A stretch of DNA of 64,000 bases, from positions 124,001 to 188,000 of IMG/VR virus record IMGVR_UViG_3300024336_000005; one strand, 5' to 3'. A model generated the notes under the pieces. That model was not told the origin of the DNA. It saw only the letters and a list, made by a program, of their open reading frames with translations, and made no database searches. Position numbers and translations under genes: made by a program. Positions 3,862 through 8,136 of the stretch are shown here, piece by piece; positions within the stretch are counted from its first letter, which is position 1, and each line of letters starts with the position of its first letter.

Positions 3862-4059
3862 ATGTCGTCAAGGAACAGAGAGAATGATGCGACGATTAAG
3901 AGGTTGCAGCGAGTGTCGGATGTCCTCAAGCAGGAGATGAGGGAGATCCCCTTCTTGCCAAAGGACATCACGGACACTTTGAACGGTACCATCAGCTACG
4001 TAAAGCGTAGATGTGCCGCGCTAGGTCCAGTAGAAGAGGCATCTGACTCACCAGAGTAA
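3862..4059 (+). CDS. hypothetical protein
   Basis: RBS AAGGAG; 65 aa. Confidence 0.6.
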   Translation: MSSRNRENDATIKRLQRVSDVLKQEMREIPFLPKDITDTLNGTISYVKRRCAALGPVEEASDSPE

Positions 4060-4082
4060 GTGTCCAAATAGCTTTTGTCTTA

Positions 4083-4412
4083 CTCTTAGTGAAGAGGAGA
4101 CATGTAGCACCTAAACTGGCTCCCTAGTAGCCGAGAGTCGGCGGGTCGTTCAGTTTAGGTGCAGTAGTTACCGAGCCAGCAAAGTCATCGATCGTACGTC
4201 AACAAAGAAGAGCTAGTAGTATAGACTAGTAAGCTTCAGACGTCCGGCTCGAGACCCAGTCTGGCGGCCGGCGGAGGAGATGATCTCCGGCGCCGTGGGA
4301 CCGTACTTGGTCCGCCATGGTAACTACAACTGCAGCGAGGAGACATGTACATGATCCAGACCTGGTCACCAGCTCTTAGGGGCCCATAAGGCCTGACCTG
4401 GATGTCCATGTC
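4083..4412 (+). ncRNA. large multi-stem non-coding RNA candidate
   Basis: Perfect inverted repeats 4107-4118/4151-4162 and 4164-4172/4319-4327; also 4173-4177/4246-4250 and 4342-4347/4407-4412; no credible ORF. Confidence 0.55.
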
Positions 4413-4495
4413 GATAACGCTGTGGAGAACTACTTCTATATATGTCAAGTACTACAATAGGTCTAGAACTATTGGGCATAAAGAAGGGTAGTTCT

Positions 4496-5048
4496 GCGGG
4501 TGAAGTGTTTAGGTTGCACGTCTGGCTTCCTTCCAAACTTTCGCTGTTATTGGAATCCAAGCACTACGCTTGGAGGGCTACAATGAAAGTTTGCACTAAA
4601 TGCAATGAACAAAAGACACTAGAAAACTTTTCATGGAAAGATAAAAATAGAGGAAGAAAAGCTTCCGAATGTAAGAGTTGTCATAAAATAATGAGGTTGG
4701 CTTATTATCAAGCTAACAAAACAAAAGAAAGACAACGAGCAAATCATCGCAGGATGAATCTCAAAGCATGGTACAGGGACTTAAAGAAGACACTGTGCTG
4801 TCATAAATGCAGAGAGAGCCACCCTGCGATATTACATTTTCACCATAAAGTTTCTAACCAAAAAGAACTTGAAATATCTATAGCCATCAACCATGGATGG
4901 TCAAAAGAGCGCATTCTAAAAGAAATGAATAAATGCGAAGTTCTTTGTGCCAATTGTCATGCTAAGCATCATTGGGATGAAAGGTACGAATAGTGCTTTA
5001 CATTCCTCAACCCAGAAAGACAGAGTTCGATTCTCTGTACCCGCACCA
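4496..5048 (+). tRNA. tRNA, probably Gly(TCC), interrupted in the anticodon loop by an ~480 nt HNH-coding insert
   Basis: 5' half 4496-4530 (GCGGGTG, D-arm, TCTGG-CTTCC) pairs with 3' half 5010-5048 (AC-CCAGA, CAGAG-TTCGATT-CTCTG, TACCCGC-A-CCA). Confidence 0.8.
4583..4993 (+). CDS. HNH homing endonuclease-like protein inside the tRNA
   Basis: N-terminal CxxC..CxxC; CHKC..LHFHH..LCANCHAKHH; RBS GGAGGG; AT-rich. Confidence 0.85.
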   Translation: MKVCTKCNEQKTLENFSWKDKNRGRKASECKSCHKIMRLAYYQANKTKERQRANHRRMNLKAWYRDLKKTLCCHKCRESHPAILHFHHKVSNQKELEISIAINHGWSKERILKEMNKCEVLCANCHAKHHWDERYE

Positions 5049-5054
5049 TCCTTA

Positions 5055-5143
5055 CTCTGAGAAAAGAGGAGGAGAACATTAATATATATAAGGCCAATCT
5101 TGCGCTTTTTCAATGCTCGATCGAGTTCTTATATATATTAATG
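5055..5143 (+). ncRNA. repeated structured RNA motif, copy 2
   Basis: CTCTG-AGAA-AAGAG; TGCGC (5101) and TGCTC (5114) lie inside a perfect 16 bp inverted repeat 5077-5092/5128-5143. Confidence 0.55.
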
Positions 5144-5250
5144 GTAATAAGTTTAGATCAGACATCTTTTTAGCGCTCAGATAGATTGTCCGAGCTCGAA
5201 GAAAGAAAAATAATCTGAATACACAAGTGGAACTTAAGATAACCACTTGT

Positions 5251-5337
5251 GGGATGTTAGCCGAATTGGTTGAAGGTACCGGACTCTTAATCCGGAGAGT
5301 GAAAGCTCCATTCTGGGTTCGAACCCCAGGCGTCCCA
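5251..5337 (+). tRNA. tRNA-Lys(CTT) with a long class II-type variable arm
   Basis: CCGGA-CTCTTAA-TCCGG; variable arm GAGT-GAAA-GCTC; CTGGG/CCCAG T-arm; no encoded CCA. Confidence 0.85.
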
Positions 5338-5381
5338 CTTAAGTCCATACTCTAGGAATAGAGATACTCTTTCGGGAGTAT

Positions 5382-5453
5382 CCGCCCTTAGCTCAGTTGG
5401 TAGAGCATCTGGTTGAAGCCCAGTGGTCTCTGGTTCGATTCCAGAAGGGTGGA
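5382..5453 (+). tRNA. tRNA-Phe(GAA)
   Basis: CCGCCCT/AGGGTGG acceptor, loop TTGAAGC, TTCGATT T-loop. Confidence 0.9.
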
Positions 5454-7796: not shown

Positions 7797-7823
7797 GCGA
7801 CCTAAGGCTTGCCTTGGGGTCGG

Positions 7824-7897
7824 GCCCGCTTAGCTTAATGGATTAAAGCGACGGTCTACGAAGCCGTTAAATCTAGGTTCGAATCCTAGAGTGGGTG
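7824..7897 (+). tRNA. tRNA-Arg(ACG)
   Basis: ACGGT-CTACGAA-GCCGT; CTAGG/CCTAG T-arm. Confidence 0.9.
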
Positions 7898-7907
7898 CAT
7901 AGTCTAA

Positions 7908-8041: not shown

Positions 8042-8121
8042 GCCAGCGTGGCTCAGTGGCGACAGCACCGATCTTGTAAGTCGGTATCTCAACATCGTAG
8101 GTTCGATTCCTACCGCTGGCA
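8042..8121 (+). tRNA. tRNA-Thr(TGT) with a 12 nt variable loop
   Basis: GCCAGCG/CGCTGGC acceptor, CCGAT-CTTGTAA-GTCGG. Confidence 0.88.
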
Positions 8122-8136
8122 CATAAGGAGAGAAAT

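What the first reader, a model, noticed from the sequence alone, without database searches (positions are those of the whole stretch)
4496..5048. tRNA split by an HNH ORF with no group I or II core; mature anticodon ambiguous (TCC or TCA)
Seen: both tRNA halves are intact with CCA. The ~480 nt insert is almost all ORF, with only ~50 nt and ~15 nt flanks, and these pair with each other (AAGCACTA/TAGTGCTT, GGAAT/ATTCC) to loop out the ORF. A TTCCT direct repeat lies at 4527 and 5003. A junction after position 36 gives Gly(TCC); a junction after 33-35 gives TCA, which would read UGA. The discriminator is A rather than the usual bacterial Gly U. Inference: a protein-spliced intron reminiscent of archaeal ORF-containing introns, or a recently inactivated tRNA.
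Basis: partly seen in the sequence, partly recalled or inferred. Interest (0 to 1): 0.75.

Follow-up and report, generated by a model that had tools for sequence, protein, structure and literature searches.

The report
Homing endonuclease gene splitting phage tRNA-Gly
A selfish HNH nuclease gene of a kind that normally sits between phage tRNA genes has landed inside the anticodon loop of this marine phage's only glycine tRNA gene; nothing in the sequence could splice it out, so the tRNA is most likely a freshly broken gene and not a new kind of intron.

Summary
Window 4496-5048 holds two complementary halves of one tRNA, with CCA, separated by 479 nt. Most of that insert is an intact 136-aa HNH ORF (4583-4993).

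The anticodon ambiguity is resolved. The 5' half through C36 matches an uninterrupted phage tRNA-Gly(UCC) over 19 nt. A syntenic relative carries intact tRNA-Gly genes in this slot. The genome uses the standard code, with TGA as an ordinary stop. So this was tRNA-Gly(UCC), not a UGA reader.

The insert is neither a group I or II intron nor an archaeal-type intron. No G lies within 14 nt of any workable 3' junction, there is no bulge-helix-bulge, Rfam gives no relevant hit, and the genome has no splicing endonuclease or RtcB.

The HNH belongs to a family of free-standing endonuclease genes that live in phage tRNA clusters (Felix O1 ORF47, crAss001 gp8), often next to tRNA-Gly. Related loci carry tRNA-Gly fragments broken at the anticodon loop. 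The insert has 37% GC against 49.6% for the genome, so it arrived recently.

Best reading: a homing-endonuclease cassette inserted into its likely target, disabling the phage's only Gly tRNA. Protein-mediated splicing is not excluded, because the phage has an RNA ligase, but nothing supports it.

The parts
4496..4530 (+). 5' half of tRNA-Gly(UCC): acceptor 5' strand, D arm, anticodon-stem 5' strand, and loop C32 U33 U34 C35 C36
   Evidence: ARAGORN -i. Window 4512-4530 is identical over 19 nt to the intact tRNA-Gly(UCC) of L090. It also aligns with the L001 tRNA-Gly 5' half.
4527..4534 (+). Left junction: tandem TTCC|TTCC. The first copy is U33 plus the anticodon; the second is the start of the cassette. 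This is junction microhomology.
   Evidence: Read directly. The cassette's TTCCAA start is homologous to L001 4963-4968 and L023 1454-1459.
4531..4555 (+). Conserved cassette hairpin TTCCAA-N13-TTGGAA. The left arm has the sequence of the Gly anticodon loop.
   Evidence: The same TTCCAA...TTGGAA inverted repeat lies just upstream of the HNH in L001 and L023. In L023 the left arm is the anticodon loop of a truncated tRNA-Gly 5' half.
4534..4593 (+). 5'-UTR stem (CAAACTTTCGCTGT / ACAATGAAAGTTTG) enclosing the inner hairpin CCAAGC/GCTTGG. It buries the SD (4572-4577) and the ATG (4583).
   Evidence: the repeat finder I5; minimum-energy folds. A role in translational control is inferred.
4583..4993 (+). 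HNH endonuclease ORF, 136 aa, with an N-terminal CxxC...CxxC zinc ribbon and a C-terminal HNH motif (HFHH...N...CANCH...H)
   Evidence: phrog_2255 at E 2e-25. 13 homologues found; the catalytic and zinc residues are invariant in the alignment of the query with 11 of them. Homologues in Felix O1 and crAss001 are annotated as HNH endonuclease.
4994..5009 (+). 3' flank of the cassette. It contains the right-hand TTCC(T) (5003-5007) and has no G after 4995.
   Evidence: Read directly.
5010..5048 (+). 3' half of the tRNA: A37 C38, anticodon-stem 3' strand CCAGA, 4-nt variable loop, T arm, acceptor 3' strand, A73, CCA
   Evidence: ARAGORN -i. Window 5023-5073 aligns with the 3' end and downstream flank of a tRNA-Gly gene in the syntenic relative L085.

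Best explanation
This is a free-standing HNH homing-endonuclease cassette (5' hairpin, SD, 136-aa ORF) of a family that colonises phage tRNA gene clusters. In this 204-kb marine phage it sits inside the anticodon-loop coding sequence of the only tRNA-Gly gene (ancestral anticodon UCC), right after C36.

Proposed mechanism; steps 1-3 are inferred, step 4 rests on what the sequence lacks:
1. The enzyme is translated from its own SD/ATG, probably held in check by a 5'-UTR stem that buries both.
2. During co-infection it cuts cassette-free tRNA-Gly(UCC) genes at or near the DNA that encodes the anticodon loop.
3. Break repair copies the cassette in. Usually the result leaves an intact tRNA beside it. 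Here a microhomology (TTCC) join put it inside the gene, which also destroys the target site and protects this genome from its own enzyme.
4. The transcript has no ribozyme core and no protein-splicing signal, so the interrupted tRNA is most likely not matured. The phage has effectively lost its tRNA-Gly recently.
For: **HNH identity and intactness:**

**Family habit:**
- 43 of 80 IMG/VR loci have tRNAs within 1.5 kb.
- 34 of the 84 loci examined, which include the two cultured-phage loci, have a same-strand tRNA abutting the ORF.
- The cultured-phage homologues Felix O1 ORF47 and crAss001 gp8 both abut tRNA-Gly.
- The closest homologue (54% identity; sister at 99/91) lies directly after an uninterrupted tRNA-Gly(UCC) in L001, and shares the upstream TTCCAA...TTGGAATCCAAG element with the window.

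**Breakpoints at the Gly anticodon loop in other lineages:**
- L023 has a truncated 5' half ending at CTTCCAA, fused to the cassette and followed by an intact tRNA-Gly.
- L057 has a 5' half ending at CTTCCAA and its matching 3' acceptor strand, bracketing an intact tRNA-Gly plus the HNH.
- L070 has the same upstream arrangement of a CTTCCAA-ending fragment before an intact tRNA-Gly.
- Further tRNA scars occur in L025, L026, L035 and L037.

**Cassette-free alleles:**
- L085 is syntenic (IMPDH, Ile(GAT), small ORF, Gly, Gly, Lys(CTT) ... Phe, ligase) and has intact Gly genes.
- L090 has an intact tRNA-Gly(UCC) with the same D-stem, anticodon-stem and anticodon 19-mer.

**Recent arrival:** insert GC is 37% against 49.6% for the genome, in the lowest 0.2% of windows.

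**No splicing apparatus:**
- No Rfam hit.
- No G in the 16 nt (4996-5011) before the anticodon-stem 3' strand, so there is no omega-G.
- No GUGYG.
- No BHB: C32-C35 cannot pair with 5005-5008.
- No PF01974, RtcB or Rnl1 in the genome.

**RNA library:** contigs run continuously from 3872 through the 5' half into the ORF, to 4890, at depth 11-13 where neighbouring stretches have depth 0-6.

**Precedent:** T4 SegB is a free-standing endonuclease in a tRNA cluster that cuts inside tRNA genes (PMC2330249).
Against: - Both halves are perfectly intact, including CCA. No other Gly tRNA exists in a genome rated complete, although GGA is its commonest Gly codon. A spliced tRNA would therefore be useful.
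- The two flanks pair better than about 99% of shuffles.
- The phage encodes an RNA ligase (phrog_968, E 2e-47) and an AAA_33 kinase-like ORF.
- Two other tRNA-like genes in the genome carry short, ribozyme-free inserts in their anticodon loops.
- Cleavage of tRNA-Gly DNA by this enzyme is inferred from breakpoints, not shown.
- The RNA data are assembler contigs. They could not have shown a 74-nt spliced product.
Confidence: 0.75

Rival explanations
1. This is a working, ribozyme-free tRNA intron. The precursor is cut at both junctions by a host or phage endoribonuclease, and the halves, held together by the acceptor and anticodon stems, are sealed by the phage RNA ligase to give tRNA-Gly(UCC) with loop CUUCCAC.
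For: - The halves are intact and the genome has no other Gly tRNA.
- GGA is the most used Gly codon.
- The flank duplex has p about 0.012.
- An RNA ligase (phrog_968) and a kinase-like ORF are present.
- The loop CUUCCAC occurs naturally in intact phage tRNA-Gly(UCC) genes (L024, L027).
- Other tRNA-like genes in this genome have short anticodon-loop inserts.
Against: - There is no BHB, no EndA and no RtcB.
- Phage RNA ligases are common and are explained by tRNA repair.
- The flank pairing is absent from the homologous cassettes and from the predicted minimum-energy folds.
- No tRNA was found spanning the HNH in 80 related loci.
- Symmetric cutting at the TTCC repeats would give a 10-nt loop.
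- The insert is compositionally recent, so intact halves need no selection to explain them.
- An unspliced junction is present in RNA-library contigs.
Confidence: 0.08
2. Splicing after position 33-35 yields a tRNA with anticodon UCA that reads UGA as glycine or another amino acid.
For: ARAGORN's default join gives TCA. That product folds as a cloverleaf.
Against: - The genome is fully coding under the standard code: 90% is covered by ORFs of at least 100 aa.
- TGA ends 50 of 166 long ORFs, with no avoidance.
- The 5' half carries U34 C35 C36, exactly as in an intact Gly(UCC) homologue.
- The slot holds Gly genes in the syntenic relative.
- The same lack of any splicing mechanism applies here.
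Confidence: 0.02
3. This is a degenerate or highly compact self-splicing (group I-like) intron whose core overlaps the ORF.
For: The whole 553-nt RNA folds more stably than shuffles (z = -5.6). The cassette's UUGGAA can pair with the exon's UUCCAA, as an internal guide would.
Against: - There is no G at or near any 3' junction that restores a 7-nt loop; the last G is 4995.
- The pairing contains no U.G wobble.
- Rfam group I and II models give no hit at E<=10.
- Only 68 non-coding nt are available.
- The same hairpin exists in cassettes that are not inside any gene (L001).
Confidence: 0.02

Closest known systems
Free-standing HNH endonuclease genes in phage tRNA clusters (Felix O1 ORF47 / NP_944871, crAss001 gp8 / YP_009910748; phrog_2255)
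   Same: Homologous proteins (36-39% identity over 96-98% of the query). They have the same size and zinc-ribbon + HNH layout, lie on the same strand as the tRNA genes and packed tightly among them, and both abut tRNA-Gly.
   Different: Those genes lie between intact tRNA genes. Here the cassette is inside one, in the anticodon loop, and the genome has no compensating Gly gene.
T4 SegB (GIY-YIG homing endonuclease in the T4 tRNA gene region; PMC2330249)
   Same: A free-standing endonuclease gene in a tRNA cluster. It cuts inside tRNA genes of related phages that lack it, and drives inheritance of its own region.
   Different: It has a different nuclease fold (GIY-YIG rather than HNH). SegB recognises the T-psi-C motif, whereas here the breakpoints point to the anticodon loop. 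segB does not interrupt a tRNA gene.
Genes split by free-standing endonuclease insertion in T4-like phages (Aeromonas phage Aeh1 nrdA split by mobE; PMC3045599, PMC2988022)
   Same: A homing-endonuclease gene with no intron or intein, inserted inside a functional gene and cutting it into two pieces.
   Different: Those are protein genes whose two products reassemble. A tRNA broken in its anticodon loop has no known way to work without covalent joining.
Group I introns with homing-endonuclease ORFs in bacterial and phage tRNA anticodon loops (PMC3984707)
   Same: The insertion site is a tRNA anticodon loop, and there is an endonuclease ORF between the halves.
   Different: No ribozyme core, no omega-G and no Rfam match. 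Only 68 nt lie outside the ORF.
Archaeal ORF-containing / BHB tRNA introns and split tRNAs
   Same: Ribozyme-free interruption of a tRNA. The flanks can pair.
   Different: No bulge-helix-bulge at the junctions. The genome has no splicing endonuclease or RtcB. The gene content and the relatives found in searches of phage records and viral contigs point to a tailed phage; the host was not determined.

Membership tests
Group I intron | Terminal guanosine (omega-G) immediately before the 3' splice site | tested here: not met
   The last G before the anticodon-stem 3' strand is at 4995. Positions 4996-5011 contain no G, and workable 3' junctions lie at 5007-5010.
Group I intron | Conserved catalytic core (P3-P9) detectable by covariance model | tested here: not met
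   No RF00028 hit at E<=10 in 4300-5250. Only 52 + 16 nt are non-coding.
Group II intron | 5' GUGYG, domain V, 3' AY | tested here: not met
   The insert starts UCCUU or UUCCA. There is no Rfam group II hit.
Archaeal/eukaryal protein-spliced tRNA intron | Bulge-helix-bulge at the exon-intron junctions | tested here: not met
   Loop nt 4526-4529 (CUUC) cannot pair with 5005-5008 (CCUC). No 3-4-3 motif appears in the folds.
Archaeal/eukaryal protein-spliced tRNA intron | Splicing endonuclease (EndA, PF01974) and RtcB-type ligase available | tested here: not met
   Neither is found in the 204-kb genome; the controls behaved as expected. The host genome is unknown.
Free-standing HNH homing endonuclease of phage tRNA clusters | HNH nuclease motif with zinc-binding cysteines conserved; ORF intact | tested here: met
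   phrog_2255 at E 2e-25. C73, C76, H87, H88, C118, C122, N124, C125, H126 and H130 are invariant in the alignment.
Free-standing HNH homing endonuclease of phage tRNA clusters | Presence/absence polymorphism: related genomes carry the site without the gene | tested here: met
   L085 (syntenic) and L090 have uninterrupted tRNA-Gly genes.
Free-standing HNH homing endonuclease of phage tRNA clusters | Residence in or next to tRNA genes | tested here: met
Free-standing HNH homing endonuclease of phage tRNA clusters | Site-specific cleavage of the cassette-free allele, and homing in mixed infection | not testable with these tools
   Inferred only, from recurrent breakpoints at the Gly anticodon loop.
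tRNA-Gly(UCC) | G1:C72, C2:G71, G3:C70, C35, C36; cloverleaf | tested here: met
   Read from the sequence. Cloverleaf and ARAGORN Gly(tcc) call for the 4530|5010 join.
tRNA-Gly(UCC) | U73 discriminator (bacterial type) | tested here: not met
   The window has A73. An intact phage tRNA-Gly(UCC) in L003 also has A73, so this does not exclude membership.
UGA-reading tRNA (suppressor / Sec) | Genome tolerates or needs UGA decoding (TGA depleted as a stop, or in-frame TGAs) | tested here: not met
   TGA ends 50 of 166 long ORFs. The standard code gives 90% ORF coverage. The tRNA has no Sec-type long variable arm.

The most novel reading that the evidence does not exclude
The interrupted gene is a working tRNA. 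In that case a bacteriophage would carry a ribozyme-free, ORF-bearing tRNA intron, removed by protein enzymes (an unknown endoribonuclease plus the phage's phrog_968 RNA ligase). The short anticodon-loop inserts in two other tRNA-like genes of the same genome might be handled by the same pathway. This would be enzymatic tRNA splicing outside archaea and eukaryotes.
Probability: 0.07. Interest if true: 0.9.

Novelty: new variant of a known kind. Interest (0 to 1): 0.35.

Why it matters
Homing-endonuclease genes normally survive by hiding in introns or inteins, or between genes. This one sits unprotected inside a structural RNA gene, at what appears to be its own target site.

Together with the truncated and duplicated tRNA pieces in related loci, it suggests that one widespread HNH family (it includes genes of Felix O1 and crAss001) repeatedly breaks and reshuffles phage tRNA arrays, with the tRNA-Gly anticodon loop as one hotspot. 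That bears on how phage tRNA repertoires turn over, and on how endonuclease genes might first enter a gene before any intron exists.

For annotation, it is a caution. An 'intron-containing tRNA' call in a phage can be an endonuclease-disrupted gene, and ARAGORN's default join (TCA, labelled SeC) is misleading here.

Tried and rejected
- **Ribozyme search.** Rfam at gathering score over the whole window, and at E<=10 over 4300-5250, gave only chance snoRNA/miRNA-level hits.
- **Stop-codon recoding.** ORF coverage under codes 11, 4/25 and 15 shows the standard code fits. TGA stops are common. The UCA reading was rejected.
- **Hidden second Gly tRNA.** Infernal tRNA model over the genome plus a stem-loop regex for Gly anticodon loops found none.
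- **Close relatives of the phage.** megablast against phage records found nothing. The ligase as a single-protein query in IMG/VR found nothing. An exact 38-mer of the 3' half found nothing. Relatives were reached only through ligase homologues and a 19-mer.
- **Cassette-free allele of this same phage.** Low-share runs X11, X13 and X14 showed only short contigs identical to the window and no joints.
- **RNA evidence for splicing.** The one RNA run is held as assembler contigs. It shows an unspliced 5' junction and no joints, and it cannot show a 74-nt product.
- **Pfam and PDB.** Pfam on the ORF gave no HNH hit. PDB sequence search with the family profile gave only weak HNH-motif hits (6ghc at E 0.014).
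- **Flank pairing as an intron-closing helix.** It is significant against shuffles, but it is not in the minimum-energy folds and not conserved.
- **TTCCT repeat as a target-site duplication.** Removing one copy leaves a 10-nt loop, so it is not a clean duplication. It is better read as junction microhomology.
- **The 47-nt-insert tRNA.** An exact 22-mer search for its relatives found nothing.

Full report
**Context.** The window is bases 124001-188000 of a 204,008-bp IMG/VR virus record from seawater, rated complete by CheckV.
- It uses the standard genetic code: ORFs of at least 100 aa cover 90% of it under code 11.
- It carries 32 conventional tRNA genes for 18 amino acids, with none for Gly or Asn.
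- Genes around the finding include a NUDIX protein, an IMPDH-family protein, an ATP-dependent DNA ligase, dCMP deaminase, ClpP and a ribonucleotide reductase. This is the gene content of a large tailed phage.

- The halves belong together. The acceptor strands (GCGGGTG / TACCCGC) and the anticodon-stem strands (TCTGG / CCAGA) are complementary. The D and T arms are normal, and A73 and CCA follow.
- Either candidate join folds into a cloverleaf.
- The insert holds a 136-aa ORF (4583-4993) preceded by GGAGGG. It matches PHROG 2255 'HNH endonuclease' at E 2e-25. It keeps every cysteine, histidine and asparagine that is invariant in an alignment of its homologues.
- The arrangement is not an assembly error. 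A second assembly (L092, 204,029 bp) is identical through the region. Contigs from four separate runs cross one junction or the other.

**It is not a known kind of intron.**
- Group I splicing needs a G as the last intron base. Positions 4996-5011 contain no G, while any junction that restores a 7-nt loop lies at 5007-5010.
- The insert does not start with GUGYG.
- No group I, group II or small-ribozyme model matches at E<=10.
- A bulge-helix-bulge would need loop bases 4526-4529 (CUUC) to pair with 5005-5008 (CCUC), and they cannot.
- The genome has no EndA-type endonuclease, RtcB or T4 Rnl1 homologue.
- It does encode an RNA ligase (PF09414; phrog_968 at E 2e-47) and an AAA_33 kinase-like ORF. 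These are typical of phage tRNA-repair kits.

**The tRNA was tRNA-Gly(UCC).**
- A syntenic relative (L085; ligase 61% identical) shares the gene order IMPDH, tRNA-Ile(GAT), small ORF ... tRNA-Lys(CTT) ... tRNA-Phe(GAA), ligase. It carries two uninterrupted tRNA-Gly genes (TCC and GCC) where the window has the split gene.
- The window's T arm, acceptor 3' strand and downstream flank align with those of one of these Gly genes (76% over 51 nt, E 1e-5).
- A 160-kb phage contig (L090) has an intact tRNA-Gly(UCC) identical to window 4512-4530 over 19 nt. This stretch covers the D-stem 3' strand, the anticodon-stem 5' strand and C32-C36. It has the same TCTGG/CCAGA stem and the loop CTTCCAA.
- G1:C72, C2:G71 and G3:C70 are the bacterial Gly identity pairs (established knowledge of GlyRS recognition).
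- A73 instead of U73 also occurs in an intact phage tRNA-Gly(UCC) (L003).
- The UCA reading is an artefact of where ARAGORN places the join. TGA ends 50 of 166 long ORFs, so a UGA reader would be harmful.
- A join after C36 gives the loop CUUCCAC, which exists in intact phage tRNA-Gly genes (L024, L027).

**What the insert is.**
- *Sequence relatives.* The ORF has 13 relatives in the large protein collection and at least 505 in IMG/VR.
- *Position in tRNA clusters.* Of the 80 best IMG/VR loci, 43 have tRNA genes within 1.5 kb. Among the 84 loci examined, which add L001, L003 and the two cultured-phage loci, 34 have a same-strand tRNA abutting the ORF, often overlapping its stop codon.
- *Cultured phages.* The homologues Felix O1 ORF47 and crAss001 gp8 are annotated as HNH endonuclease. 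Each lies directly beside tRNA-Gly.
- *Closest relative.* At 54% identity, and sister in the tree with 99/91 support, it lies in L001 immediately after an uninterrupted tRNA-Gly(UCC) and immediately before tRNA-Ile(GAT).
- *Shared upstream element.* The DNA alignment shows that homology between the two cassettes begins upstream of the ORF, at TTCCAAA-N-TATTGGAATCCAAG. This TTCCAA...TTGGAA inverted repeat also precedes the HNH in L023. There its left arm is the anticodon loop of a truncated tRNA-Gly 5' half, fused to the cassette and followed after the ORF by a complete tRNA-Gly(UCC).
- *L057.* A 5' half ending at CTTCCAA and its matching acceptor 3' strand bracket an intact tRNA-Gly plus the HNH. 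L070 shows the same upstream arrangement.
- *Other scars.* Broken or duplicated tRNA pieces flank family members in L025 (Met), L026 (Phe-like, ORF starting in the anticodon loop), L035 and L037 (Pro).
- *No spanning tRNA elsewhere.* ARAGORN called no tRNA spanning the HNH in any of the 80 loci. Only L026 resembles the window, and its halves do not rejoin cleanly.

Taken together, this is the signature of a free-standing homing endonuclease that cuts tRNA genes and leaves repair scars. In several lineages the target is the Gly anticodon loop. The experimental precedent is T4 SegB, which lies in the T4 tRNA cluster and cuts inside tRNA genes of phages that lack it (PMC2330249). The precedent for an endonuclease gene splitting a functional gene is nrdA of Aeromonas phage Aeh1 (PMC3045599, PMC2988022).

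**The insertion is recent.**
- The insert has 37% GC against 49.6% for the genome and 52% and 46% for the flanks. It lies in the lowest 0.2% of 479-nt windows.
- The left junction is a tandem TTCC|TTCC: the tRNA's U33-C36, then the cassette's own TTCCAA. The right junction carries TTCCT again. This is microhomology, not a clean target-site duplication, since deleting one copy would leave a 10-nt loop.
- Intact halves therefore need no selection to explain them.

**Flank pairing.**
- The duplex between the two flanks (-14.9 kcal/mol) beats about 99% of shuffles and all 110 natural control windows, so it is not trivially chance.
- The predicted folds instead use local hairpins: the conserved TTCCAA/TTGGAA element, a stem that buries the SD and ATG (4534-4547 / 4580-4593), and a hairpin at the ORF's 3' end.
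- The homologous cassettes have no 3' flank at all.
- I read the 5' structures as control elements of the endonuclease gene (inference). The copy of the target sequence upstream of the ORF could serve as an operator, as described for I-TevI (my own knowledge, not tested here).

**RNA evidence.** One seawater metatranscriptome holds contigs that run continuously over 3872-4655 and 4630-4890 at word depth 11-13. Neighbouring stretches have depth 0-6, and nothing covers 4984-5411. This is consistent with transcription from upstream, through the tRNA 5' half, into the HNH ORF without cleavage at the 5' junction. No joints were seen. Assembler contigs could not have shown a 74-nt product, so this is weak evidence.

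**Verdict.**
- Most likely (about 0.75): a homing-endonuclease cassette has inserted into, and disabled, the phage's only tRNA-Gly gene. The insertion also removes the enzyme's probable target from its own genome.
- About 0.08: the gene still yields a tRNA through protein-mediated cutting and ligation. The phage's need for a Gly tRNA (GGA is its commonest Gly codon), its RNA ligase, the flank pairing, and two other tRNA-like genes with short ribozyme-free anticodon-loop inserts keep this open. Nothing positive supports it.
- About 0.02 each: a UGA-reading product, or a cryptic ribozyme.

The finding is a real and tidy example of an unusual insertion by a known class of selfish element. It is a new variant of a known kind, of moderate interest.

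Noticed in passing
window 5251-5338: An 88-nt tRNA with anticodon CUU and a long (type-II-like) variable arm. Its ends match the ordinary 76-nt tRNA-Lys(CTT) in the same slot of relative L085, so it looks like a Lys tRNA that gained an extra arm.
   Followed up: partly
G000:C1:121165-121297 (outside the window, about 2.7 kb upstream of it): A tRNA (His GTG by ARAGORN; Infernal 42 bits) with a 47-nt insert right after nt 36 of the anticodon loop, plus a long variable arm. The insert contains a 5-bp stem with the 7-nt loop GUCUUAA, which resembles a Lys(CUU) anticodon arm. It is too short for a ribozyme. An exact 22-mer found no relatives.
   Followed up: partly
G000:C1:90894-90985 (outside the window): A tRNA-like gene (Infernal 29.5 bits, missed by ARAGORN) whose anticodon loop holds a 14-nt GAAA-tetraloop hairpin.
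   Followed up: no
G000:C1:112781-112868, 105925-106012 and 110501-110583 (outside the window); window 8042-8122: Several tRNAs of this phage are oversized or odd: a 'tgta' four-base anticodon call, an 88-nt His, an 83-nt Gln and an 81-nt Thr with expanded variable regions.
   Followed up: no
window 5077-5092 and 5128-5143: A perfect 16-nt AT-rich inverted repeat (CATTAATATATATAAG / CTTATATATATTAATG) with 35 nt between the arms, 30 nt downstream of the split tRNA.
   Followed up: no
G000:C1:96785-98146 and 82660-83049 (outside the window): A 453-aa RNA ligase (PF09414; phrog_968 at E 2e-47) and a 157-aa AAA_33 kinase-like ORF. Together they could form an RNA-repair pair.
   Followed up: partly
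L057:1366-1948: The 5' half of one tRNA-Gly (ending at CTTCCAA) and its matching 3' acceptor strand bracket an intact second tRNA-Gly plus the HNH gene. AATAAATTATGC is repeated at both junctions, as if the cassette carried a replacement tRNA.
   Followed up: partly
L026:325-837: A Phe-like tRNA whose anticodon loop runs straight into the start codon of an HNH ORF of the same family, with the T arm and acceptor 3' strand right after the stop codon. Rejoining would leave a variable region of about 12 nt.
   Followed up: partly
L013:26-110 and L041:1261-1335: tRNA genes with anticodon CTA (amber-suppressor type) in the tRNA clusters of two unrelated viral contigs that carry this HNH family.
   Followed up: no
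L085:7820-9800: The syntenic relative's tRNA region holds several tRNA-like stretches with T arms and CCA ends that ARAGORN does not call, for example around 7822-7901.
   Followed up: no
window 4442-4993: A 183-aa ORF runs in frame from upstream of the tRNA, through the 5' half, into the HNH. Homologues start at the internal ATG (4583), which has the SD, so the extension is probably not translated.
   Followed up: yes
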